Shown: positions 1,796-33,291, counted from the first letter of the stretch. The stretch: DNA of 35,104 nt from Octopus sinensis (GCF_006345805.1 NW_021832935.1:1-35104), one strand, 5' to 3'. Numbers and translations: made by a program. The notes: generated by a model not told the origin, from the letters alone.

Positions 1796-3057
1796 TATTG
1801 GAATGAAGAAAATTAGTAGAAAAATTCGTATGCTACTGACTTGAAACCACCCAAAAGAACACATGCAATGATTTTATCTCTGCAGAGCCTAGAGAGGTTG
1901 TGGCCTGATCCAGTTTGTACTTTTTTAGAAAATCGCCACCATTGGACAGGTCAAATAACTTAAAATAACTAACGAATGGATTCTAAAACTTGTTGAAAAT
2001 CACGAGGCGTAAGAAGTAGAGTAAAAAATTTGCGGTTGGTTTCCTGCATGACACCCAGGCTGAACAGTCTTAGAGAAGTATGACAACCGTTATTGCAATG
2101 AAGGTAAAATTAACGGCTTAGAAAAAAGCACAAGGACAATTGGCAGGTAGATGGGAGCAGAAATATCTGCATGGCCAATATGTGACCAGTAGCAAACAAA
2201 CTGATGTCGACCAGAGATACACCCATCAGTGGCTACGGAACTCAGGACTAAAAGCAGAGAGCGAAGGTTTTATCTCAGTTGCACAAGATCAAATTTTATT
2301 GACCCGAAACTACCAAGCCAATGTGATGAGAAATGGAATAGATCCAAAGTGCTGATTTTAATATGATGAGATTGAAACAGGGGACCACCTAATTTACACT
2401 GTATGTAAATTTTTAACACCATTAGAGTATAAGTCAAGACATGACAAAGTTGGCCAATATCTACACTGGTTAATATTTCGGCATTATAAAACTAAATCTA
2501 TTGACAAGTGGTATAATCGCTAATCTGAGGCCGTAAATGAGGGAGAAAGTGTAGCGATTCTTTCGGTATTTCCAGTACATACGGACAGAACCATCAAAGC
2601 TAATAAAACGAATATTGTTGTAAAAGACCAAAATAATAAACTCTATTTATCAACATGAGTATTCCTTGTGATCATAATGTCTCGGCAAAGAATTTGAAAA
2701 CTTAGGAAATATAAATATTTGCTGATTGAAAATGAAAACACGTCGCGTCTCAAGGCAGTTAATATACGAATGATTCTAAGAGCACTTGGGAGATCAGAAA
2801 AAGGACTGAGAATTATTCGAGACTAATCCCTGCAAAATATTGTTTTAACTTGTAACTCACACGAATTAAGAAGAGCATTGTGACCGACAGAACGATGACC
2901 TTCCATGCAATTATCTTTTTTACGTAAGTTCATTTGATTTTGTAAATGAACACGCTTGTGTTTTTTATTATAATGGCCTCTCAAGGTATACAGTGAGGTT
3001 CTTTGCGCTAGGTGTCGAGAAGTACTCGGAAAGAAGTGGAAACAAAATTGAAAGAAG
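1796..3057 (+). mobile_element. 5'-truncated decayed R4/Dong-type non-LTR retrotransposon, copy L1 (post-RT region, degenerate Zn knuckle, RLE endonuclease, 3' UTR)
   Basis: Frame-broken translation includes RKIRMLLT, LCRA*RGCGLIQF, WILKLVENHE, KYLHGQY, HQWLRNSGLKAESEGFISVAQDQILLTRNY, RHDKVGQYLHW, PVHTDRTIKANKTNIVVKD, KYKYLLIE and HELRRAL*. Its 3' UTR resembles that of L2. Confidence 0.9.
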
Positions 3058-3657
3058 ATGCCCTGATGCAGTACCAGGATGCCCTGACGCAGTACCAGGA
3101 TGCCCTGATGCAGTACCAGGCAGTGGCTCTCATGGTTTCTGATCTTAACTGATTGGAAGTGTTAGCATGTACATTGTTTTGTCTTGGTATAAAAGATGGG
3201 CTACAGCAAATATTCTGCTCAATACCACAGATTTGCTTGTCAGTTGTTTGACCTTAACCAGTTGAGCATGTCCCTTAGTGGCTGACGATATGTGCATCTC
3301 TGATCACGAGCAGAAGTAGTGGGGGGGGGAGCATCATAGCCATGTGTTGAGAGGGATTCTTTGGGGTTTGAATAATTCACCTCTGGAAACATGGGTGGTT
3401 CTTTCAACATCCTTAAACAACCCTTATTCAGGGACCTTTTGAGCGGGATGGGCTACTCAACCTGAAGAAAATTCTAACTGGGCCCCACCTGCAAGGTCAT
3501 GTGCTGTTTATCTTGATATGAGATCACCATGTCGCGCACATATGGTTGTGATGCATGTGACTGGTGTACCTTTATCAGACGGGTAGTCATGATGGTATAT
3601 TGGGCTCGTATATTTTACCTCAGTGTCACTTTGATGGCATGCACTGCTCTCTCACTC
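3058..3657 (+). mobile_element. ~600-bp non-coding (AAT)n-associated element, copy A (three 21-bp head units)
   Basis: Same sequence recurs at 3728-4260, 4928-5528, 20020-20560 and 20587-20656. Head unit atgccctgatgcagtaccagg x3 at 3058-3120. Ends ctctcactc followed by (aat)n. Confidence 0.9.
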
Positions 3658-3670
3658 AATAATATAATAA

Positions 3671-3704
<34 letters not shown>

Positions 3705-3727
3705 TATTATTATTATTATTATTATTG
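3658..3727. repeat. (AAT)n switching to (ATT)n; tail-to-tail junction
   Basis: Strand polarity flips at about 3703. Confidence 0.9.
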
Positions 3728-4260
3728 GAGTGAGAGAGCAGTTCATGCCATCAAATTGACACTGGGATAAAATATACGAAGCCCAATATACCCATCATAA
3801 CTACCCGTCTGATAAGGGTACACCAGGCACATGCATCACAACCATATGTGCGCGACATGGTGATCTTATATCAAATAAACAGCACATGACCTTGCAGGGG
3901 GCCCAGTTAGAAATTTCTTCAGTTGAGTAGCCCATCCCGCTCAAAAGGTCCCTGAATAAGGGCTGTTTAAGGATGTTGAAAGATTCACCCATGTTTCCAG
4001 AGGTGAATTATTCAAACCCCAAAGAATCCCTCTCAACACATGGCTATGATGCTCCCCCACTACTTCTGCTCGTGATCAGAGATGCACATATCGTCAGCCA
4101 CTAAGGGACATGCTCAACTGGTTAAGGTCAAACAACTGACCAGCAAATCTGTGGTATTGAGCAGAATATTTGCTGTAGCCCATCTTTTATACCAATACAA
4201 AACAATGTACATGATAACACTTCCAATCAGTTAAGATCAGAAGCCATGAGAGCCACTGCC
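3728..4260 (-). mobile_element. ~600-bp element, copy B (head missing)
   Basis: Reverse complement of 3119-3657 with about 20 differences. Flanked by (ATT)n on both sides on the plus strand. Confidence 0.9.
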
Positions 4261-4338
<78 letters not shown>

Positions 4339-4350
4339 CATCATTATTAT

Positions 4351-4885
4351 CTTTTCCTTTCAATTTGCTTCCATTTCTTGCCGAGTGTCTTCCCGACTCC
4401 TAGGGCAAAGAAACTCATAGTATACATTGGTAGGCCATTAAACTAAACTCAATAGTTCGTTCATTTTTTTTTTTTAAAGTTAAAAAACTTTTACTACATG
4501 GGTAGTAATAGTTCTCACAGCGACAATGCTCTTCTCAATACGTGTGATGTACCAGTTAAGACAATCTTTTGCACTTCTTGCAGGGATGGTAAGCCAGGGA
4601 TCATTCTCATATAAATTTCGGTTCCCTTCTTGATCATTCCTAGTGCTCCTACGATCACTGGTATTGTAACCGCCTTGAGATGCCACATTTTCTCAATTTC
4701 AATGAGCAGGTCTTTATATTTTCTGAGCTTGTCAAACTCTTTCGCCGAGATATTATGATCACAGGGGTTGCTCATGTCGATCAATAAGCAAACTTTATTG
4801 TTTTTGTCTTTCACAACAATATCTGGTTTATTGGCTTTGATGGTTCGGTCTGTATGTACCGGAAAGTCCCACAGAATCGTTACAC

Positions 4886-4887
<2 letters not shown>
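4351..4887 (-). mobile_element. 5'-truncated R4/Dong-type LINE, copy L2, uninterrupted RLE-domain frame plus 3' UTR
   Basis: Open frame 4887 to 4515: VTILWDFPVHTDRTIKANKPDIVVKDKNNKVCLLIDMSNPCDHNISAKEFDKLRKYKDLLIEIEKMWHLKAVTIPVIVGALGMIKKG...GTSHVLRRALSL*. This is a PD..D..K RLE motif. (AAT)n flanks both ends on the element strand. Confidence 0.93.
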
Positions 4888-4927
<40 letters not shown>

Positions 4928-5528
4928 GAGTGAGAGAGCAGTGCATGCCATCAAAGTGACACTGAGGTAAAATATACGAAGCCCAATATACCCATCATGA
5001 CTACCCGTCTGATAAAGGTACACCAGTCACATGCATCACAACCATATGTGCGCGACATGGTGATCTCATATCAAGATAAACAGCACATGACCTTGCAGGT
5101 GGGGCCCAGTTAGAATTTTCTTCAGGTTGAGTAGCCCATCCCGCTCAAAAGGTCCCTGAATAAGGGTTGTTTAAGGATGTTGAAAGAACCACCCATGTTT
5201 CCAGAGGTGAATTATTCAAACCCCAAAGAATCCCTCTCAACACATGGCTATGATGCTCCCCCCCCACTACTTCTGCTCGTGATCAGAGATGCACATATCG
5301 TCAGCCACTAAGGGACATGCTCAACTGGTTAAGGTCAAACAACTGACAAGCAAATCTGTGGTATTGAGCAGAATATTTGCTGTAGCCCATCTTTTATACC
5401 AAGACAAAACAATGTACATGCTAACACTTCCAATCAGTTAAGATCAGAAACCATGAGAGCCACTGCCTGGTACTGCATCAGGGCATCCTGGTACTGCATC
5501 AGGGCATCCTGGTACTGCATCAGGGCAT
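4928..5528 (-). mobile_element. ~600-bp element, copy C (three 21-bp head units)
   Basis: Nearly identical reverse complement of copy A. (AAT)n on both sides on the element strand. Confidence 0.92.
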
Positions 5529-5549
5529 TTATTATTATTATTATTACTA

Positions 5550-5599
<50 letters not shown>

Positions 5600-5663
5600 T
5601 ATATTATTATCATCATTATTGTTATTTTTATTATTATTATTATTATGCAGCAAACTGGCATAG

Positions 5664-5787: not shown

Positions 5788-6000
5788 AGGTGGCGTGTTG
5801 GTAGAATCGTTAGCACGCTGGGGAAAATACTTCGTGATATTTCACCCGTCGCGACGTTCTGAGTTCAAATTCCACCGAACTCGACTTTGCCTTACATCGC
5901 TTCGGAATCGATAAATTAAGTACCAGTCAAGCACTGGGGTCGATATAATCGACTAGTCCCTCCCCCGCCAATTTCAGGCCTTGTGCCTATGGTAGAAAGG
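5788..6000 (+). mobile_element. tRNA-derived SINE, family 1, tail type a, ending in (ATT)n
   Basis: Box A-like tggtagaatcgttag and box B gagttcaaattcc. Body matches 21761-21993 and 32142-32374; the 3' tail differs. Confidence 0.88.
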
Positions 6001-6047
<47 letters not shown>

Positions 6048-6168
6048 CATATTATTATTATCATTATTATTATTATTATTATATTATATATTATTATTAT
6101 TATTATTATTATTTTTATCATTATTATTATTATTATCATTATTATTATTATTATTATTATCATTATTA

Positions 6169-6213
<45 letters not shown>

Positions 6214-6289
6214 TATCATTATTATCATTATTATTATTATATTATTATATTATTATTATTATATTATTATTATCATATTATTATTATTA

Positions 6290-6331
<42 letters not shown>

Positions 6332-6389
6332 CATTATATCATTATTATTATTATTATATTATTATTATATTATTCATTATTATCATTCA

Positions 6390-6422
<33 letters not shown>

Positions 6423-6433
6423 CATTATTATCA

Positions 6434-6468
<35 letters not shown>

Positions 6469-6545
6469 GTATATTATTATATCATATTATTATTATTATA
6501 TTATTATTATTATTATTATCATTATTATTATTATTATTCTTATTA

Positions 6546-6576
<31 letters not shown>

Positions 6577-6662
6577 CATTATTATCATTATTATATTATT
6601 ATTATTATTATTATTATTATTTATTATTATATTATTATTCTTATTATCATTATTATCTATTA

Positions 6663-6698
<36 letters not shown>

Positions 6699-6712
6699 CA
6701 TTATTATCATTA

Positions 6713-6745
<33 letters not shown>

Positions 6746-6776
6746 CATTATTATCATTATTATTATTATTATTATA

Positions 6777-6819
<43 letters not shown>

Positions 6820-6909
6820 CATATTATCATTATATATTATTATTATTATCATTTTATTATTATTATTATATTATTATTATATTATATTATTATTATTATC
6901 ATTATTATT

Positions 6910-6940
<31 letters not shown>

Positions 6941-7000
6941 TATTATCATTATTATTATATTATATTATCATTATTATCATTATTATTATTATTATTATTA

Positions 7001-7043
<43 letters not shown>

Positions 7044-7143
7044 CATTATTATCATTATTATTATTATTATATTATCATTATTATTATTATTATTATTATC
7101 ATTATTATTATTATTATAATTATTATCATTATTATTATTATCA

Positions 7144-7178
<35 letters not shown>

Positions 7179-7271
7179 TATTATTATTTATTATCATTAT
7201 TATCATTATTATTATTATTATTATTATCATTATTATTATTATTTATTATTATATTATTATTATTATTATTT
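6001..7271. repeat. ~1.27-kb imperfect (ATT/ATC)n array
   Basis: Direct reading. Source of the spurious 378-aa ORF. Confidence 0.95.
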
Positions 7272-8455
7272 ACTTTTAATCTGCATGTTTGTTACAATCA
7301 TTTGCCAAGACACACCCAGCGAGTGAAGGATAAGAGATGTTAGAGTATGACTGAAAGCTTGTGGAGGGGATGTGGCAGTGGCACACATTTATATTGATGG
7401 GGTTTTTCTAAGAATGTAGACAGTACTTGTTAGCACAAACTTTTTGATTTCTCTGAGACATGGTTCTCCTGGGACATTATCTAGATGTTTTTGACATCCC
7501 TTTCTTATCATACCTAGGACACCCACAATAACAGGAACAGTTCTCGCGATAAGATGACACATCTTTTGCATTTCAATTTCTAGGTCCTTATATTTACTTA
7601 ATTTGTCAAATTCCTTTACAAATATATTTTTATCAGTGGGAAAACTTACATCTATTAGTCTACAAGTATTTTCTTCCCTGTCTTTAATGACTATGTCTGA
7701 TCGATTAACGTGAATCGTTTCGTCGTTGTTGACTGAAAAATCCCAGCGGATAGTGATATTTTACCTTCAACGACTGGCTCAGGGTGATGTTAATACCAGT
7801 AAGCAGGAGTGCTGATTTTGTAGTGTTTACTTATTTTTCAATGTAAATGGTCCTGCCCTATCGTGGCGATTTTTGTACGCGTTTGGTTTCAGCACAAGAC
7901 ATCCCGAGACGAGATGGTCTATTGGTTCGTCAAATATATCACAGAATCTGCATTTAGAGTCAGAACCGTTTTGAAAAACGTTAGCCTGGTAGTTTTTGGT
8001 AAAGAAGCTTTGGTCTCGTGCCACCAATATGAAACCTTCAGTCTCTGCTTTCAGCCCTGAGCTTCTCAGCCACTGACGGGTTGTTGCTTAGTTTACATGA
8101 ATTTGTTTCTGTCCGTTCTTTTTTGCAGTCTGTTTGATCCGTTTTGCCTGTTCAGTGGCAGTGGTTTCAGGTTCTTCATCTAATTCAAAGTAAATGCCGA
8201 GTTCCCTTGCGAATTTACAAGCTTCCTTGACAATAGAATGTGACTTTTTGCGGCTTTCGTATTTGTACAAAGCAGCATCCAGTGCTCTGTACTAGATAAT
8301 TACCTGTTCATTGCTATTGTAGAGGTCCTATAGTACAGTTCTACCTGCATCATCCCCCCATTACTTCTAGGTAGGTACAGACGATCAATGTCTGCTTCTG
8401 AGTGGTGCATGTTCTTCGAAGTTAATAGTTTTCTTGTCTTCCTCTATATGCGCAT
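7272..8455 (-). mobile_element. 5'-truncated R4/Dong-type LINE, copy L3
   Basis: RKTRKLLTSKNMHHSEADIDRLYLPRSNGG, QWLRSSGLKAETEGF, intact CCHC knuckle CRFCDIFDEPIDHLVSGC, RLE region with KEFDKLSKYKDLEIEMQKM and TSTVYILRK. (AAT)n at both ends on the element strand. Confidence 0.92.
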
Positions 8456-8618
8456 TACCATTATTATTATTATTATTATTATATTATTATTATTATTATT
8501 ATTATATTATTATTATTACTATTACTACTACTACTACTACTACTACTACTAGTATTATTATTATTATTATTATTACTACTACTACTACACTACTACTACT
8601 ACTACTACTACTACTAAC

Positions 8619-8663
<45 letters not shown>
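8456..8663. repeat. (ATT)n/(ACT)n microsatellite
   Basis: Direct reading. Confidence 0.95.
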
Positions 8664-8664
<1 letters not shown>

Positions 8665-9240
8665 TGCCCAAAACCAATATAAAGTCGTGGCGACACGCTA
8701 AGGTAGCGAAAGTGCTGCGTTGGAAACTGCAACACGTGGTATGATCATAAACCACAGAGAGTGGTGGAGTCGGAACCCTATATAATCCCGTGGGATTTCC
8801 CAATGCAAACAGACCAAGCGCTTGAGTACAACAAGCCGGACCTAGTGGTGATGGTCATGGTTAGACCACATGTGCTCTCTAATTGGTGTCGCGTGCCTCT
8901 CTGACCCACGAATAGTTATGAAAGGATGCGAAAAAACAGACATATAAAACTCTCTTAAATACGAGACAGCTTGAGAGTAGAAAATAAAGAAGGTGAGGAG
9001 AGTGCCAAACATTTTTGGTTCCTTGGGGACAGTAACAGAAGCATTTAAGAGGAATATAATGGTAATAGGAAAAAGGTGCCCAGTAGAGGCTGTTGCAAAA
9101 CGTTTGTCTCCTTGGCACGGCCAGAATCACCAGCAAGATATTAGGTACTTAAAGAGAACAGATGGCATGGAACCGTAGTCTGCAGGTTGCAATGCCAGAC
9201 TCCAGGAGTTTCAAAACTACCTGAGTTAAACGAATAAAAA
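8664..9240 (+). mobile_element. Older 5'-truncated R4/Dong-type LINE, copy L4 (distinct subfamily)
   Basis: AQNQYK, WRHAKVAKVLRWKL, WYDHKPQRVVES, WDFPMQTDQALEYNKPDLVV, VPNIFGSLGTV and GTARITSKILGT*. AAT-like 3' flank. Confidence 0.85.
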
Positions 9241-9603: not shown

Positions 9604-9705
9604 AGAACTAGGTTTACAAAGAATAAGACTTGGGGCCGATTTACTCAACTAAAGTGGGGTGCTCCAGCATGGCCGCTGTCAAATGACTGGAACAAATAAA
9701 AAAAT
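9604..9705 (+). mobile_element. 3' fragment of SINE family 2
   Basis: Matches 21240-21335 (gctccagcatggccgc...aaatgact). Confidence 0.75.
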
Positions 9706-9719
9706 ATAGATAGATAAAT

Positions 9720-10241
9720 AGATAACATGTATATACATATATATATGTATACACACACAGATATATGTACATATGCATATATAACATATGAGATATATTT
9801 TCAGCATGTTACATAACATGCATAACACATATTATGCATATTAACGAACATATATATACATACACACATATATACATATAGATATATAATATACATATAT
9901 ATTTATTATTTGTTGTAGAAAGAGTACCTTATATATTATATTTTAAATATTTATATATATATATATATAATATATATATATATATATAATATATATATAT
10001 ATATATGTATATACATATATTATGTGTATATACATATATATATATATACGTATATATGTATAAAATATATTTTAGGTGTTAATATATTTTATATGTTTTA
10101 TAAATATACGATATATTTATGTATTATGTTATATAAATACACCATGTGTGTCATATATATATATATATCATGTTAAATATTAACTATTATGTGTAATATG
10201 TTATGTTCTATATATGTTATATTTATATTATATTATATATC

Positions 10242-13940: not shown

Positions 13941-14084
13941 CTCTCTCTATTTCTCTCTCTCTCTCTATCTCTCTCTCTCTCTCTCTCTCCCTCTTCCACT
14001 CTCCTCTCCTTGCATCTGTGTGATAGCTGAATGAGCTTCTCTGCTTACGACCAAAGAATCAACTAAAACAAATTAGTGAGACGA

Positions 14085-14245
14085 CGAGTTTCTTTTATTT
14101 TCCGTCTGCCAAATTCATCCACAAGGTTTTGGTCGGCCCGACTCTATAGAAGGAGACATTTACCCAAGGTGCCATGCAGTGGTACTGAACTCAGAACCAT
14201 GCGGTTGGGAAGGAAGCTTCCTACCTCACAGACAAGCCTGCGCCT
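14085..14245 (-). mobile_element. 5' part of SINE family 2
   Basis: Reverse complement of 20935-21095. Confidence 0.8.
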
Positions 14246-14892
14246 AAAGTGTAAAGTTTACCTCGTTAGCTTTTATACTTTAGAGAACACAGAAAGTTTC
14301 TGGTTGCTACGAAGCCCTATTGGTCTGTCCGACGTCATTCCTCGATTGAAATAAAGACACTTGTATTTAAAGAATCTTCTGGATTGAAATTGGATTATCC
14401 AAATTTCCAAGATCAGCTCCGTCTTTGGAAATGGAGCTTCGAGCAACTTTTTAGAATTTCTTGAAGCATGAACGACAAATGACGATCAAGAAAGAAAAAT
14501 CTCTTCATATTCTTGACAACTTTGCCTCAATGGTATTGAAAGGAATCAACCATAACCATGTGTCCTGTGGTCATTCCACAGACAATCTTACCATTTTCTA
14601 CAAATAGCCAGACAATATGGCTTCAGAATATAGATGTCATATGACTCGTAGATTAGACCAGAATCTCTCATAACCATTCCAAACTTATCACGAAAGAATC
14701 AGCAAATGTAGTCAGAAAGTTTAATTCATCGATTTTAATCTCTCCAGAGATTTGAAGTTATAGGAAATCTATGAAAACATTAGTGTGTATGTGTGTGTGT
14801 GTGTGTGTGGTGGCGGTGTTGGGTGGCAGTGGTGTGTGGGGTCGGGGTTGCGCATAAACAGTTAAATTCTGTTTGTTAACAGAGAAGTTGTT

Positions 14893-15671: not shown

Positions 15672-15882
15672 AGGAGCGTTATCTAAACTTGCAACAGGAT
15701 AATTCGAAGGTACTATTTTATATCCTATGCACCTCCTAATTTCAGAAGTAAATAGACACCTTTAATTTTCAAAATTTCTGATCTAGGCGTCTTAATATAT
15801 TTTCAGCAGTGTAGAATTTACAATGTAATTATTCTTTATTCATTCCAGGTGCCATTATATTAAACTTTTGTGAAAAGTAACC

Positions 15883-16266
15883 ATGTCACGCACAAAAAAT
15901 TCAGCAGAACTGTCAGATTTTCAAAGAGGTCGTATTGTTGGGGAATCTGAGGCTGGTCTTTGCCAGCGAAAACTTGCCGAAAATCTTCAAATTCCTCTTG
16001 CTACATTTATTAGTATTATAGTGCAATTCAAAAGCCAAGGAACAGAATCAACAGATTCTCCTCTCGGGCGACGACCTAGGCCCTCGGAAAGGAAGCTTCA
16101 CTGTTTGAAGAGAATTGTGGAAAACGAAACCCGTTCGAAGGCTTCTGATATTGCAAAACAGCAAGAAGTTAGTCCAAGAACGTGTGTTACATATCTGCAT
16201 AAGTTCAGGTATTATGGACGAGTAGCTAGAAGAAAACCTCACCTTCAACCAATTAATATCAAATAA
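15883..16266 (+). pseudogene. Tc1-like transposase, N-terminal paired-type HTH DNA-binding region only
   Basis: ELSDFQRGRIVG...GRRPR...SPRTCVTYLHKFRYYGRVARRKPHLQPIN. No DDE domain follows. Confidence 0.85.
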
Positions 16267-16334
16267 AAGATTTTGAAAAGTAAAGGTGTCTATTTACTTC
16301 CTGCATGTCTGTGTATATTCTATTTGCCTTGTAT

Positions 16335-19167: not shown

Positions 19168-19331
19168 TCTATTATAGGCGCCTGGCCTGAAAATTGGCGG
19201 AGGATCATAATCGATTACATCAATCCCAGTACGCAACTGGTATTCGGCGGGGTTGATCTTAGAAAGCGAAGGACGAAATACCGCTAAGCATTTCGCTCGG
19301 CATGCAAACGTGTCTGTTAGCTATCCGCCTT
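19168..19331 (-). mobile_element. Internally deleted SINE family 1, tail type a
   Basis: Minus strand aaggcgg...gaaatgcttagcggtatttcgtc...gatgtaatcga...ttttcaggcc. Confidence 0.75.
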
Positions 19332-19341
19332 AATGATGATG

Positions 19342-19433
<92 letters not shown>

Positions 19434-19434
<1 letters not shown>

Positions 19435-19931
19435 GGCACACACCAGAAAAGGTCACAGAAAACGAGAAAGCAACCATACTCTGGGATATGCCGATACACA
19501 CAGATAGAGAAATTAAGGCCAACAGACCATATAGTTGTCAGAGATCATGAAGAAAAAAGCTTTCTAATTGATGTTCAATACCGGCAGATGACAACGTGTC
19601 TCTAAAAGAAATGGAGAAACTTTCAAAATACAATACCTGGAAATAGAGGTAACCAGAATGTGAATCTAAAAACAGAAACAATTCCTATCATAGTAGGTGC
19701 ATTAGGCATGATAAAAAATATTCAGACAAATACATAACAAAAACACCATGACTTACAAACACATGTAACATACAGAAAATTGCACTACTAGGCACTGCAC
19801 ACATCCTACGCAGAACACTTTCCATACAATAACCATCAGAGCATCACAACAAATCACAGCACATACCCAAGGCACACAAGCTGCGCTCGGTAGTGAAGTG
19901 AAAGCACGCTATAAAAAAAAACTACTGAATG
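19434..19931 (+). mobile_element. 5'-truncated R4/Dong-type LINE, copy L5, between two (AAT)n tracts
   Basis: RHTPEKVTENEKATILWDMPIHTDREIKANRP, KEMEKLSKY, ETIPIIVGALGMIK and QKIALLGTAHILRRTLSIQ* (stop 19830-19832), with about five frameshifts. ~100-bp 3' UTR. (AAT)n at 19332-19433 and 19932-20019. Confidence 0.93.
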
Positions 19932-20019
<88 letters not shown>

Positions 20020-20560
20020 GTACCAGGCAGTGGCTCTCATGGCTTCTGATCTTAACTGATTGGAAGTGTTATCATGTACATTGTTTTGTCTTGATATAAA
20101 AGATGGGCTACAGCAAATATTCTGCTCAATACCACAAATTTGCTTGTCAGTTGTTTGACCTTAACCAGTTGAGCATGTCCCTTAGTGGCTGACGATATGT
20201 GCATCTCTGATCCCGAGCAGAAGTAGTGGGGGAGCATCATAGCCATGTGTTGAGAGGGATGCTTGGGGTTTGAATAGTTCACCTCTGGAAACATGGTGGT
20301 TCTTTCAACATCCTTAAACAACCCTTATTCGGGGACCGTTTGAGCGGGATGGGCTACTCAACCTGAAGAAAATTCAAACTGGGCCCCACCTGCAAGGTCA
20401 TGTGCTGTTTATCTTGATATGAGATCACCATGTCGCGCACATATGGTTGTGATGCATGTGCCTGGTGTACCTTTATCAGACGGGTAGTCATGATGGGTAT
20501 ATTGGGCTTCGTATATTTTACCCCAGTGTCACTTTGATGGCATGAACTGCTCTCTCACTC
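20020..20560 (+). mobile_element. ~600-bp element, copy D (head truncated by 13 bp)
   Basis: Colinear with copy A. (AAT)n on both sides. Confidence 0.92.
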
Positions 20561-20586
20561 AATAATAATAATAATAATAATAATAA

Positions 20587-20656
20587 ATGCCCTGATGCAG
20601 TACCAAGCAGTGGCTCTCGTGGCTTCTGATCTTAACTGATCGGAAGTGTTAACATG
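20587..20656 (+). mobile_element. ~600-bp element, copy E (single head unit, first 70 bp only)
   Basis: atgccctgatgcagtaccaagcagtggctctc directly after (AAT)n. Confidence 0.85.
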
Positions 20657-20657
20657 C

Positions 20658-20795
20658 TCCAGTTCGCTAAGTTGGCAAAAGTGAGTAATTTTGCGACGGA
20701 CTGGCGTCCTATCCCGGGGAAAAATATATGCGTCACGGAAACCGAGAAAACCGGGCCCTATTGATCTGAATGACTCAGGAAGAATCTTTATCCTC
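20658..20795 (+). mobile_element. Probable SINE 3' fragment
   Basis: gcgacggactggcgtcctatcccgggg motif, typical of SINE bodies (recalled, not searched). Confidence 0.45.
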
Positions 20796-20934
20796 TTCTA
20801 ACCTATTCAAGGAATCCGAGAGATTCAGGATCACCCTGACCATCAACGCACACATCCCCACCCAACTGCTTTTCTCCATTCTACAGGTGCAGGCCAGCAA
20901 TTTTAGAGGAAGAAGTTTAAAAAATTATTTCGAT

Positions 20935-21350
20935 AGGCGCAGGAGTGGCTGTGTGGTAAGTAGCTTGTTAACCAACCACATGGTTCCGGGTTCAGTCCCA
21001 CTGCGTGGCACCTTGGGCAAGTGTCTTCTACTATAGCCTCGGGCAGACCAAAGCCTTGTGAGTGGATTTGGTAGACGGAAACTGAAAGAAGCCTGTCGTA
21101 TATATGTATATATATATATGTGTGCGTGTGTGTTTGTGTGTCTTTGTTTGTCCCCCTAACATTGCTTGACAACCGATGCTGGTGTGTTTACGTCCCCGTC
21201 ACTTAGCGGTTTGGCAAAAGAGACCGATAGAATAAGTACTGGGCTTACAAAGAATAAGTCCCGGGGTCGAGTTGCTCGACTAAAGGCGGTGCTCCAGCAT
21301 GGCCGCACTCAAATGACTGAAACAAGTAAAAGAGTAAAAGAGTAAAAGAG
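20935..21350 (+). mobile_element. Full-length tRNA-derived SINE family 2 with internal (TA/TG)n and (AGTAAAAG)3 tail
   Basis: Box A tggctgtgtggtaag, box B gggttcagtccc and CORE-like accttgggcaagt. Fragments recur at 9604, 14085 and 32891. Confidence 0.9.
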
Positions 21351-21497: not shown

Positions 21498-22290
21498 GTG
21501 AGGGCACATAGCTAAGTGATTAAGATATTCGGCTCGTTCATGCTTATTTCTTTATTGCCCACAAGGGGCTAAACACAGAGGGGACAAACAAGGACAGACA
21601 AAGGGATTAAGTCGATTACATCGACCCCAGCGCGTAATTGGTACTTAATTTATCGACCCCGAAAGGATGAAAGGCAAAGTCGACCTCGGCGGAATTTGAA
21701 CTCAGAACATAGCGCCAGACGAAATACGGCTAAGCTTTTCGCCCGGTGTGCTAACGTTTCTTATTTCTTTATTGCCTACAAGGGGCTAAACATAGAGGGG
21801 ACAAACAAGGACAGACAAAGGGATTAAGTCGATTATATCGACCCCAGCGCATAACTGGTACTTAATTTATAGACTCCGAAAGAATGAAAGGCAAAGTCGA
21901 CCTCGGCGGAATTTGAACTCAGAACGTAACAGCAGACGAAATATCGGTAAGCATTTCGCCCGGCGTGCTAACGTTTCTGCCAGCTCGCCGCCTTTCGGGT
22001 GGCTCATGCTTGTAAAGTCATGAGTTCGATACCTGGCGATGCACTGTGTCTTTAAGCGAGACACTTTATCTGACGTTGCTCAAGTCCACTCAGCTGGCCA
22101 AAATGAGTAGCACCTGTATTTCAAAGGGCCAGCCTTGTCACACCTTTATAACGTTGAATATTCCTAAGAACTACGTTAAGGGTACGCATGTCTGCGTAGC
22201 GCTCACCCAATTGCAAGTGAATTTCATGAACAGGCTGTTCCGTTTTATGGACCAACTAGAACCCTCATCGTCGTAACCGACGAAGTGCCA
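21498..22290 (+). mobile_element. tRNA-derived SINE family 3, split by the 21546-21993 insertion
   Basis: Head gggcacatagctaagtgattaag...gagttcgatacc is interrupted. Body continues to gtcgtaaccgacgaagtgcca. Confidence 0.75.
21546..21993 (-). mobile_element. Head-to-tail dimer of SINE family 1, tail type b
   Basis: Full copy 21761-21993 plus 5'-truncated copy 21546-21760. Degenerate 18-bp TSD at 21528-21545 and 21994-22011 (15/18). Confidence 0.9.
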
Positions 22291-31834: not shown

Positions 31835-31958
31835 GTGGAAGAGTAAAGTCCTGGGAGAAGTGCCCTGTATTTGTTCCACTTCTTTGTGGCCTGATTTGCT
31901 TCATAGTAATCTTTAACTGTCACCCAATTAAAACCCCTACCTGTTCGTCGAGTATCTT

Positions 31959-32374
31959 ATTTCTTAACTACCCACAAGGGGCGAAACACAGAGAGGACAA
32001 ACAAGGACAGACAAACGGTTTAAGTCGATTATATCGACCCCAGTGCATAAATGGTACTTATTCAATCGACCCCGAAAGGATGAAAGGCAAAGTCGACCTC
32101 GGCGGAATTTGAACTCAGAACGTAGCGGCAGACGAAATACCTATTTCTTTATTACCCACAAGGGGCTAAACACAGAGGGGACAAACAAGGACAGACATAG
32201 GTATTAAGTCGATTACATCGACCCCAGTACGTAACTGGTACTTAATTTATCGACCCCGAAAGGATGAAAGGCAAAGTCGACCTCGGTGGAATTTGAACTC
32301 AGAACGTAGCAGCAGACGAAATACCGCTAAGCATTTCGCCCGGCGTGCTAACGTTTCTGCCAGTTCGCCGCCTT
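31959..32374 (-). mobile_element. Head-to-tail dimer of SINE family 1, tail type b
   Basis: Full copy 32142-32374 plus 5'-truncated copy 31959-32141. Perfect 15-bp TSD ttcgtcgagtatctt at 31944-31958 and 32378-32392. Confidence 0.93.
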
Positions 32375-32890
32375 AATTTCGTCGAGTATCTTGAGTGGAG
32401 TTCCCTCTGTGACAAGCAGCCAGGTTAGGTCATCGGATGAAGATAACTTTCCTGCTTCCCTCAACCAGAGACGGAGATACTGAAAATATAAAGGACCCTA
32501 TACACTTCCCTTCCCTTCCTCACTAAATGATTAAAAACACAGCCCGTTTTTCTACATAACTACTGTTTACTCAATAGTTAAGAGGGGTATGTACCCCGAG
32601 CAACCTAATAGTATACATCCCTCTTAGAGAGGGTCATTACGCCAATGTTATTAGCACAAGCACTGGTTCAAATCCCCTTCTTTATTATTAGTCATTTGGT
32701 TAAGTATCTTTCCTTAATCGATTATTTGTTTAACTTGTTTAAACAATAAGCTGTTTCGTTGCTGTATGAAACTGGTGCGTGTGTTAGTAATATTGGCATA
32801 ATGACTCTCCTTAGACACAACCAAATTTGTTTCAACACACGAATTCACACAAAGAATCTTGCAAACTAGATACAAACACCTACAAATATA

Positions 32891-33118
32891 TTTTACTTGA
32901 TTCAGTCATTTGACTGTGGCCATGTTGGAGCATCCCCTTTAGTCGAGCAACTCGACCCCAGGACATATTCTTTGTAAGCCTAGTACTTACTCTATCGGTC
33001 GGTTTTGCCGAAGCACTAAGTTACGGGGACATAAACACACCAGCATCGGTTGTCAAGCGATGTTGGGGGGAAAAACACAGACACACAAACATATATACAC
33101 ACGCACACACACACACAC
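32891..33118 (-). mobile_element. 3' half of SINE family 2
   Basis: Reverse complement of about 21130-21335. Confidence 0.85.
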
Positions 33119-33159
33119 AGACATCCTCACCCAACACACACACATATATATATATATAT

Positions 33160-33291
33160 TTCTTAACTACCCACAAGGGGCTAAACATAGAGGGGACAAA
33201 CAAGGATAGACGAAGGGATTGAGTCGATTATATCGACCCCAGTGCGAAACTGGTACTTTATTTATCGACCCCGTAAGGATGAAAGGCAAAG
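33160..33291 (-). mobile_element. 5'-truncated SINE family 1, tail type b
   Basis: Matches 31959-32092. Confidence 0.85.

What the first reader, a model, noticed from the sequence alone, without database searches (positions are those of the whole stretch)
3058..3657. Unclassified ~600-bp passenger element: no Pol III promoter, no ORF, 21-bp tandem head
Five copies in 35 kb. The 3' end (ctctcactc then aat) is invariant in four, while the 5' end varies (three units, three units, one unit, -13 bp, head lost), which fits TPRT polarity. I see no box A/B and no similarity to the four LINE 3' UTRs in the window, so its transcription and recognition are unexplained. The head can fold (tgccctg...caggca). 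It could be an internally deleted LINE derivative analogous to R2 SIDEs, processed from host transcripts, or a new SINE-like class.
Basis: partly seen in the sequence, partly recalled or inferred. Interest (0 to 1): 0.7.

Follow-up and report, generated by a model that had tools for sequence, protein, structure and literature searches.

The report
Octopus retroposon riding on (TAA)n-specific LINEs
The 600-bp repeat is a real, young, non-coding mobile element in an octopus genome that always sits inside TAA microsatellites beside restriction-like-endonuclease (R2-supergroup, Dong/R4-like) LINEs, so it is most likely a parasite of those LINEs rather than a new kind of element.

Summary
The window has four near-complete copies (A 3058-3657+, B 4928-5528-, C 20020-20560+, D 3728-4261-; 96-99.8% alike) and one 70-bp head fragment (E 20587-20656+). 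Four share one exact 3' end followed by (AAT)n. A, B and E start at the same base, and C and D lack about 55 and 60 nt. There is no ORF, no Pol III head and no terminal inverted repeat.

B, C, D and E are also preceded by (AAT)n, so the element lies inside (TAA)n arrays in a fixed orientation. Those arrays are the tails of four decayed LINE fragments in the window. The fragments encode RT, a CCHC motif and a restriction-like endonuclease, and they end in (TAA)n. That is the Dong/R4 pattern, which is reported as (TAA)n-specific in molluscs and abundant in Octopus.

My best reading (about 0.6) is a non-autonomous retroposon copied by target-primed reverse transcription into (TAA)n by a Dong-like LINE, analogous to R2 SIDEs.

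Three things remain unproven. The parent LINE is not in the window, I found no 5' ribozyme or promoter, and no genome-wide copies could be fetched.

Moderate interest: a new member of a known kind.

The parts
3058..3657 (+). Copy A, full length (600 bp). The head of three 21-bp units is at 3058-3120. The 3' end is ...CTCTCACTC.
   Evidence: It abuts the 3' UTR of LINE X directly, with no TAA repeats between them.
3658..3704 (+). The (AAT)n tail of copy A. At about 3700 it meets the oppositely oriented tail of copy D (3705-3727).
3728..4261 (-). Copy D. It lacks the first 60-61 nt, so the head is lost. It is 96.6% identical to A and B, and its 3' end has one extra C.
4261..4350 (-). The (AAT)n tail of LINE X'. 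Copy D sits at its downstream end.
4357..4886 (-). LINE fragment X', 5'-truncated. It carries an intact C-terminal 120-aa reading frame with the KPD...D...K restriction-like endonuclease motif, followed by a 3' UTR.
   Evidence: It is 91% identical to the independent contig L004, which ends in (AAT)n.
4887..4927 (-). The (AAT)n tail of copy B. It also forms the repeat upstream of X'.
4928..5528 (-). Copy B, full length (601 bp). The head of three perfect 21-bp units is at 5466-5528. (AAT)n lies upstream of it at 5529-5646.
1803..3057 (+). LINE fragment X, decayed (end of RT, CCHC, restriction-like endonuclease, 3' UTR). It belongs to the same family as X', at about 72-80% identity.
19331..20019 (+). 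(TAA)n at 19331-19434, then decayed 5'-truncated LINE fragment Z at 19435-19927, then its (TAA)n tail at 19928-20019.
20020..20560 (+). Copy C. It lacks the first 55 nt, keeping 8 nt of the last head unit. It is 97.6% identical to A and B. Its (AAT)8 tail is at 20561-20586.
20587..20656 (+). Fragment E: one head unit plus 49 nt (element positions 43-112). It starts at the same base as A and B and then breaks into sequence that is unique in the window.
6001..8452 (-). LINE fragment Y (7271-8452) with a 1.27-kb (AAT)n tail, which reads (ATT)n on the + strand at 6001-7270. It shows that the window is a cluster of (TAA)n-tailed LINEs of this type.

Best explanation
The element is a non-autonomous, non-coding non-LTR retroposon of an octopus genome, about 560-600 nt long, with a (TAA)n tail.

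Proposed mechanism:
1. Its RNA ends in UAA repeats.
2. A LINE of the restriction-like-endonuclease type (Dong/R4-like) nicks (TAA)n/(TTA)n microsatellite DNA.
3. The TTA strand primes reverse transcription on the UAA tail (target-primed reverse transcription).
4. The copy is laid down in a fixed orientation inside the microsatellite.

This gives one exact 3' end and either a full-length or slightly shortened 5' end. Every LINE or element insertion brings a new (TAA)n tail, so insertions pile up next to each other: X-A, X'-D, B-X' and Z-C-E.

What is shown: the copies, their ends, their position and orientation in (TAA)n, the type of the neighbouring LINEs, and that the copies are younger than those LINEs.

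What is inferred: that a Dong-like enzyme does the copying, that the tail rather than a shared 3' UTR is what is recognised, and how the RNA is made. The identical 5' base in A, B and E implies a defined transcription start or processing site, possibly in the 21-nt repeats.
For: Ends.
- Four copies share the 3' end ...CTCTCACTC followed by (AAT)n.
- A, B and E start at the same ATGCCC.
- C and D are cut short by 55 and 60 nt.

Position.
- B, C, D and E have (AAT)n on the upstream side as well.
- A starts where the tail of LINE X should begin.
- Perfect (TAA)n runs make up about 6% of the window, so exact abutment of eight element ends on such runs is not chance.

Neighbouring LINEs.
- tblastn finds LINE fragments X, X', Y and Z plus a small fifth fragment at 8665-8850. 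Each of the four large ones is followed by (TAA)n in its own orientation, and each 600-bp copy is collinear with them.
- The family has RT, CCHC and a C-terminal restriction-like endonuclease. A full-length relative (L002) aligns from RT through the endonuclease to solved R2 proteins (E about 1e-21). It has no AP-endonuclease domain in Pfam and ends in (TAA)7.
- A second octopod-like contig, L004, also ends in (AAT)n.

Literature.
- Dong/R4 elements carry RT plus a REL-endonuclease, and their target is (TAA)n in insects, molluscs and cnidarians (PMC7998251).
- Dong-R4 is abundant and recently active in Octopus vulgaris (PMC13282606).
- Window repeats match O. bimaculoides at 90-93%.

Age.
- Element copies are 96-99.8% alike in a star-like pattern.
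- The flanking LINE copies X and X' are about 72-80% alike. The element therefore inserted independently into old LINE tails.

Not a classical SINE or a DNA transposon.
- No tRNA or Rfam head, no box B and three internal T-runs.
- No terminal inverted repeats.
- No ORF or protein homolog.
Against: - No sequence similarity links the element's ends to the 3' UTRs of the LINE families present, so no parent or partner is identified.
- No 5' HDV-like ribozyme was found, although Bombyx Dong and the R2 SIDEs have one. No promoter was found either.
- Fragment E lacks everything after position 112, which target-primed reverse transcription alone does not produce.
- There are only five copies, in two clusters of one 35-kb window, and no genome-wide data could be obtained.
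- A and D face each other tail to tail, which a strictly orientation-specific insertion into one array does not explain.
- The assignment of the LINEs to the R4/Dong clade, rather than HERO or another clade with the same endonuclease, rests on architecture and target, not on a phylogeny.
Confidence: 0.6

Rival explanations
1. It is the same kind of retroposon with a different driver: a LINE with an AP-type endonuclease and a microsatellite tail, such as an octopus RTE. The (TAA)n location would then arise only from tail/target microhomology and the AT-rich nicking preference of that endonuclease.
For: RTE LINEs are abundant and reportedly active in octopus, and the described RTE-2_OV has a microsatellite as most of its 3' UTR (PMC9115989). 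No 3' UTR similarity ties the element to the Dong-like LINEs in the window.
Against: Every LINE fragment found next to (TAA)n in the window is of the restriction-like-endonuclease type. Four of five copies have the microsatellite on both sides and no recognisable target-site duplication, which is the pattern of site-specific insertion. The repeat unit of the RTE tail is not given in the paper.
Confidence: 0.15
2. It is not currently mobile. The five copies would be local DNA-level duplicates, spread by unequal crossing-over, gene conversion or inverted duplication within a (TAA)n-rich block.
For: All copies lie in two clusters (3.0-5.6 kb and 20.0-20.7 kb). X-A and X'-D form a palindrome-like layout centred at about 3700. 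A and B are 99.8% alike only 1.3 kb apart. No copy was found in 30 kb of O. bimaculoides or in any searchable collection.
Against: The flanks are not co-duplicated: X and X' are about 72-80% alike while A and D are 96.6% alike. Each copy has its own 5' end point and its own tail length. The copies differ from each other in a star-like pattern.
Confidence: 0.1
3. The true orientation is the reverse, with GAGTGAGAG... as the 5' end and the 21-bp repeats plus (TTA)n as the 3' end. Alternatively, it is a DNA-level element such as a Helitron or Crypton that targets AT-rich repeats.
For: Read in the reverse orientation, E would be an ordinary severe 5' truncation that keeps the 3' end and tail.
Against: In the reverse orientation C and D would be truncated at the 3' end with perfect 5' ends. 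A would have no tail and would abut a LINE 3' UTR. The tail would be (UUA)n, antiparallel to every LINE in the window. There are no terminal inverted repeats, no 5'-TC/CTRR-3' Helitron ends and no 3' hairpin. No hammerhead was found.
Confidence: 0.05

Closest known systems
R2 SIDEs, the short internally deleted elements of the rDNA-specific LINE R2 (Eickbush and Eickbush 2012, PMC3414825)
   Same: They are short, non-coding and lack a Pol III head. They are presumably copied in trans by a LINE of the restriction-like-endonuclease type, they insert in the same specific target as that LINE, and they have a precise 3' end.
   Different: SIDEs demonstrably keep the parent's 5' HDV-like ribozyme and its 3' end. 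Here no ribozyme and no similarity to any available LINE end was found. The target is a (TAA)n microsatellite, not rDNA. The head is a 21-bp tandem repeat.
Dong (Bombyx mori) and Dong/R4-clade LINEs
   Same: The target and tail are (TAA)n with fixed orientation, and insertions are clustered or nested. The neighbouring LINE fragments have the RT, CCHC and restriction-like endonuclease architecture.
   Different: The element has no ORF and no detectable homology to these LINEs. Bombyx Dong is released from a (TAA)n co-transcript by a 5' ribozyme (PMC3774820), which was not found here.
Classical SINEs, including the tRNA-like octopus SINEs present in the same window
   Same: The size is similar, there is no ORF, it depends on a LINE, and its tail repeat is shared with that LINE.
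   Different: It has no tRNA, 5S, 7SL or snRNA head and no box B, and it has internal T-runs. No LINE-derived 3' region was identified.
Persaeus, a SIDE of the CR1 LINE Zenon in Lepidoptera (PMC6740152)
   Same: It is a non-autonomous element without a Pol III head that spread with a LINE partner.
   Different: Persaeus shares both ends with its known parent and is not specific to a microsatellite.

Membership tests
Classical SINE | A 5' head derived from tRNA, 5S, 7SL or snRNA with an internal Pol III promoter (boxes A and B) | tested here: not met
   ARAGORN found no tRNA. Rfam gave nothing at gathering score, and the sensitive scan gave no above-chance match inside the element apart from the A/D tail hairpin. 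There is no box B and only 2-mismatch box-A strings, and three T4+ runs lie in the sense strand.
Classical SINE | A 3' region or tail shared with a partner LINE | tested here: inconclusive
   The (TAA)n tail is shared with all four large LINE fragments. There is no 3' UTR similarity above shuffles, but the three LINE families also share none with each other.
SIDE (internally deleted LINE derivative) | 5' and 3' ends homologous to a parent LINE | tested here: inconclusive
   The 3' ends of families X, Y and Z show no similarity. No LINE 5' end and no young LINE is present in the window, and no genome search was possible.
SIDE of R2/Dong type | An HDV-like self-cleaving ribozyme at the 5' end | tested here: not met
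   There was no Rfam ribozyme hit at E<=10. My own descriptor gave 0 hits for cleavage sites from -30 to +90, against 0.22 in shuffles. Nucleotides 1-7 have no perfect partner anywhere in the element. Caveats: the descriptor had no positive control, and Rfam also found nothing in the Dong-like locus L002.
SIDE of R2/Dong type | The same specific target site as the parent LINE | tested here: met
   B, C, D and E lie within (TAA)n and A lies at a LINE 3' UTR/tail junction. All are collinear with the LINEs.
Non-LTR retroposon inserted by target-primed reverse transcription | A constant 3' end with a repeat tail and variable 5' truncation | tested here: met
   Four copies have identical 3' ends. 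The 5' ends fall at position 1 (A, B), 43 (E, a unit boundary), 55/56 (C) and 60/61 (D). One anomaly remains: E is cut at position 112.
Dong/R4 clade (applied to the neighbouring LINEs X, X', Y, Z) | RT, CCHC and a C-terminal restriction-like endonuclease, with no AP endonuclease | tested here: met
   The relative L002 aligns to solved R2 proteins 9nl3 and 9dou from RT through the KPD...D...K motif. Pfam finds only RVT_1 and zf-RVT. The window fragments match its C-terminal 130-370 aa.
Dong/R4 clade (applied to the neighbouring LINEs X, X', Y, Z) | Insertion in (TAA)n with a (TAA)n 3' junction | tested here: met
   This holds for X', Y and Z in the window, and for L002 and L004 elsewhere. The literature gives the same target.
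Dong/R4 clade (applied to the neighbouring LINEs X, X', Y, Z) | Phylogenetic placement of the RT within R4/Dong rather than R2, HERO, NeSL or CRE | not tested
DNA transposon, MITE or Helitron | Terminal inverted repeats with target-site duplication, or 5'-TC...CTRR-3' ends with a 3' hairpin | tested here: not met
   There are no terminal inverted repeats. The ends read ATGCCC... and ...CTCACTC.
Penelope-like element or retrozyme | A hammerhead ribozyme in the terminal repeats | tested here: not met
   The sensitive Rfam scan gave no hammerhead hit on either strand. The head has CUGAUGC, not the CUGAUGA core (read from the sequence).

The most novel reading that the evidence does not exclude
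The element may be a distinct type of LINE parasite with neither a Pol III head nor any LINE-derived sequence. It would be mobilised only because its RNA ends in the (UAA)n repeat that Dong-type enzymes prime on. Its 21-nt tandem head would be a new kind of start or processing signal that fixes the 5' end at one base. That would make microsatellite-tail mimicry sufficient for trans-mobilisation by a site-specific LINE with a restriction-like endonuclease.
Probability: 0.2. Interest if true: 0.6.

Novelty: new member of a known kind. Interest (0 to 1): 0.38.

Why it matters
Non-autonomous partners are well documented for LINEs with an AP endonuclease. For site-specific LINEs with a restriction-like endonuclease they are rare, and the R2 SIDEs are the main case.

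A young, abundant-looking passenger of the (TAA)n-specific Dong-type LINEs in Octopus would have three uses:
- It would help classify part of the large 'unknown / unclassified SINE' fraction of cephalopod repeats.
- It would show how (TAA)n arrays grow into nests of elements.
- It would offer a short RNA substrate for asking what a Dong-type enzyme recognises, the tail or a 3' UTR structure.

It has no bearing on a host gene in this window.

Tried and rejected
Searches for more copies (all negative):
- A six-frame translation of the element against the 5.8-billion-protein collection, in the hope that spurious ORFs on octopus contigs would lead to more copies, gave no hit.
- Exact 35-mer and 21-mer scans of JGI metagenome contigs and GTDB genome contigs gave 0 hits.
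- Sequence strings were searched in paper texts and in the held supplements of two octopus papers, with no hits.
- 30 kb of O. bimaculoides chromosome (L005), reached through a Tc1 homolog, contains no copy and no (TAA)n array.

RNA structure:
- Folds of the head, the 3' end and the whole element are not better than shuffles.
- Covariation was not attempted, because four copies at 96-99.8% identity carry no signal.

Ribozyme search:
- A loose HDV-like descriptor hit everywhere (902 hits) and was discarded. The stricter version gave nothing.
- I had no positive control for the descriptor. The obvious one is the ribozyme of a human virus. While planning I began to recall that sequence in my reasoning, then dropped it.

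Readings considered and rejected:
- X-A, X'-D and Z-C as single co-transposed LINE-plus-element units (3' transduction). Rejected because the LINE parts are far more decayed than the element parts.
- A palindromic sequencing artefact for X-A/D-X'. Rejected because the arms differ (A/D 96.6%, X/X' about 72-80%).
- The sequence after E (20657-20933) as the continuation of a parent LINE. It has no similarity to anything held and no LINE-like ORF.

Full report
**1. What is there**

The stretch 3058-3657 is one copy (A) of a repeat of about 600 bp. blastn and a profile search find exactly four long copies and one fragment in the window:
- A 3058-3657 (+).
- B 4928-5528 (-).
- C 20020-20560 (+).
- D 3728-4261 (-).
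- E 20587-20656 (+).

A and B are full length. Both begin with three tandem copies of ATGCCCTGATGCAGTACCAGG. E begins at the same base, has one unit, and stops matching after element position 112. C lacks the first 55 nt and D the first 60-61 nt.

A, B and C end in CTGCTCTCTCACTC followed by AAT repeats, and D has one extra C. Identities are A-B 99.8%, A/B-C 97.6%, A/B-D 96.6% and C-D 96.1%. That is a star-like pattern with two small subfamilies.

**2. What it is not**

- No tRNA gene was found, and no Rfam family reaches gathering score in the whole window.
- In a sensitive Rfam scan of 2950-3760, the only matches above chance level are 'microRNA precursor' hits caused by the hairpin that the A and D tails form with each other.
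- There is no box B and no good box A, and the sense strand has three T4+ runs that would stop Pol III.
- The longest ORF inside the element is 56 aa. A six-frame query against the large protein collection found nothing.
- There are no terminal inverted repeats.
- The head, the 3' 150 nt and the whole RNA fold no better than shuffled sequence (z between -0.5 and -1.55). 'The head can fold' therefore carries no weight.

**3. The context**

B, C, D and E are preceded, as well as followed, by (AAT)n, so the element lies inside (TAA)n arrays. A is the exception. It starts exactly where the tail of a neighbouring repeat, X, should start.

X (1803-3057, +) and a second copy X' (4357-4886, -) are the 3' parts of a LINE. 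X' still has an open 120-codon C-terminal frame (...KPDIVVKD...LIDMS...KLRKYKDL...GALG...LRRALSL*).

tblastn with a full-length relative finds four large fragments of this kind plus a small fifth one at 8665-8850:
- X, followed directly by A.
- X', followed by (AAT)30 and then D, with B's tail immediately upstream of it.
- Y (7271-8452, -), whose tail is the 1.27-kb (ATT)n array at 6001-7270.
- Z (19435-19927, +), preceded by (TAA)n and followed by (TAA)30, C, (AAT)8 and E.

Every 600-bp copy is collinear with the LINEs relative to the microsatellite.

**4. What the LINEs are**

Pfam has no model for the C-terminal domain. The protein search gave 253 homologs from marine invertebrates, some carrying the zf-RVT domain.

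In locus L002, a tandem array of such LINEs in an ENA assembly, the element encodes about 1,200 aa. Pfam recognises only RVT_1 and zf-RVT and finds no AP endonuclease. The protein aligns from the RT through a CxxC...H...C motif and a KPD...D...K motif to the solved R2 retrotransposon proteins 9nl3 and 9dou (E about 1e-21). Its 3' UTR ends in (TAA)7. Contig L004, 91% identical to X', ends in a long (AAT)n.

The architecture is RT plus a restriction-like endonuclease, and the junction is (TAA)n. [quoted passage not shown] I did not place the RT in a phylogeny, so 'Dong/R4-like' is an assignment by architecture and target.

**5. Organism**

The SINE families of the window match a 30-kb stretch of Octopus bimaculoides chromosome CM046617.1 at up to 90-93%. 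The best named homolog of the window's Tc1 remnant is from O. bimaculoides. The window is therefore from an octopod.

Dong-R4 LINEs are reported as abundant in coleoids (PMC8967140). In O. vulgaris they are reported as recently active, with 5 families and 1,129 young insertions. That genome also has 893 'unclassified SINE' and 58 'unknown' young families (PMC13282606).

**6. Mechanism proposed**

The constant 3' end with a repeat tail, the three identical 5' starts and the two short 5' truncations form the signature of target-primed reverse transcription. Position and orientation inside (TAA)n, next to LINEs that make and target (TAA)n, point to a Dong-type enzyme as the driver. In this reading the (UAA)n end of the RNA pairs with the nicked TTA strand.

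Each insertion adds a new (TAA)n tail and so a new target. That explains five copies in 35 kb, found in only two places, as a pile-up rather than a very high genome-wide density.

The element copies are much younger than the LINE fragments beside them: 96-99.8% identity against about 72-80% for X/X', with many stops in X, Y and Z. They therefore entered old tails independently and were not carried along with those LINEs.

At A's 5' junction, comparison with X' and L004 shows that the tail and the last few bases of X's 3' UTR are missing. I read this as a small target deletion at the 5' junction. That reading rests on my general knowledge of R2-type insertions and was not tested.

**7. What remains open**

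- *Partner.* The element shows no similarity to the 3' UTRs of X, X', Y or Z above shuffled controls. The three LINE families show none to each other either. The negative result is therefore weak, and the active partner may simply be absent from the window.
- *RNA 5' end.* Bombyx Dong is cut out of a (TAA)n co-transcript by a 5' HDV-like ribozyme (PMC3774820), and R2 SIDEs keep such a ribozyme (PMC3414825). I found none here. Rfam gave nothing. A stricter home-made descriptor gave 0 hits for cleavage sites from -30 to +90, against 0.22 in shuffles. The first seven bases have no perfect pairing partner anywhere in the element. The descriptor had no positive control, and Rfam also finds nothing in the Dong-like locus L002, so this is a qualified negative. 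The identical first base in A, B and E still implies a defined start or cut.
- *Fragment E.* Its sequence after position 112 (20657-20933) is unique in everything I hold. It could be a later deletion or the head of a related longer element.
- *The tail-to-tail meeting of A and D* at about 3700, with X and X' as outer arms, is unexplained.

**8. Orientation**

If the element were read on the other strand, E would be an ordinary 5'-truncated copy. However, C and D would then be truncated at the 3' end with perfect 5' ends. A would have no tail. The tail would be (UUA)n, antiparallel to all LINEs in the window.

**9. Rivals**

- An RTE-type driver. RTE is active in octopus and is described with a microsatellite 3' UTR.
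- Local DNA-level duplication.
- Reverse orientation, or a DNA transposon.

I rate these at 0.15, 0.10 and 0.05. The remaining weight goes to unresolved variants, for example that the element is part of a longer unit.

**10. Limits**

No eukaryotic genome or repeat library could be searched by DNA. Scans of the JGI metagenome and GTDB genome collections, of paper texts and of held supplements were all negative. Copy number, genome-wide truncation polarity and the parent LINE are therefore untested. A match in Dfam, Repbase or the published octopus libraries cannot be excluded.

**11. Verdict**

The element is most likely a new member of a known kind: a non-autonomous passenger of a site-specific LINE with a restriction-like endonuclease, closest in logic to the R2 SIDEs. 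Interest is moderate.

Noticed in passing
window 2546-4888, centre about 3700: The layout is palindrome-like: LINE X - copy A - (AAT)n meets (ATT)n - copy D - tail - LINE X'. The arms are not equally diverged (A/D 96.6%, X/X' about 72-80%), so it is neither a simple inverted duplication nor a fold-back artefact. How two (TAA)n arrays of opposite polarity came to abut is unexplained.
   Followed up: partly
window 6001-7270: A 1.27-kb (ATT)n array (432 units, 86% matches) serves as the tail of LINE fragment Y (7271-8452, -). That is very long for a LINE tail and suggests microsatellite expansion or repeated insertions.
   Followed up: partly
window 8460-8850: An (ATT)n/(CTA)n array at 8460-8664 is followed by a short LINE fragment of the same type on the + strand (8665-8850). 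It lies head-to-head with Y, making a second junction of opposite polarities.
   Followed up: no
window 15744-16318: This is an internally deleted Tc1/mariner copy. An intact 127-aa HTH N-terminus (15883-16266) is 84% identical to the product of ENA contig L006. The DNA is 92.7% identical to L006 positions 98-611 and then jumps to 1310-1366, so the DDE domain is deleted.
   Followed up: partly
window 20934-21340; also 14081-14246, 32872-33109, 9604-9745: A tRNA-like SINE family (GGCGCAGGAGTGGCTGTGTGG...GGTTCAGTCCCACTGCG) is shared with Octopus bimaculoides at about 90%. ARAGORN does not call it as a tRNA.
   Followed up: partly
window 21543-21978, 31958-32325, 33157-33291, 5788-5961: A second SINE-like family (…CCCACAAGGGGCTAAACACAGAG…) occurs as head-to-tail dimers with periods of 217 and 184 bp. 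It is about 92% identical to copies in O. bimaculoides locus L005.
   Followed up: no
L002 1-12858 (ENA ERZ25067903): This is a tandem array of at least four Dong-like LINE copies in one orientation in an unidentified invertebrate. One of them ends in (TAA)7 at about 7050-7070. It is a useful full-length reference for the family.
   Followed up: partly
L004 1-1983 (ENA ERZ22666216): A metagenome contig carries octopod-like DNA. A Z-like LINE 3' end with an (ATT)n tail in reverse orientation abuts a 5'-truncated X'-like LINE (91% to the window) with an (AAT)n tail. It is another opposite-polarity junction.
   Followed up: no
literature (PMC9115989): The octopus LINE named RTE-2_OV is described with an N-terminal zinc finger, an RT, a C-terminal endonuclease and a microsatellite 3' UTR. 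That domain order resembles a LINE with a restriction-like endonuclease more than a typical RTE. It is a candidate partner worth comparing with this element.
   Followed up: no
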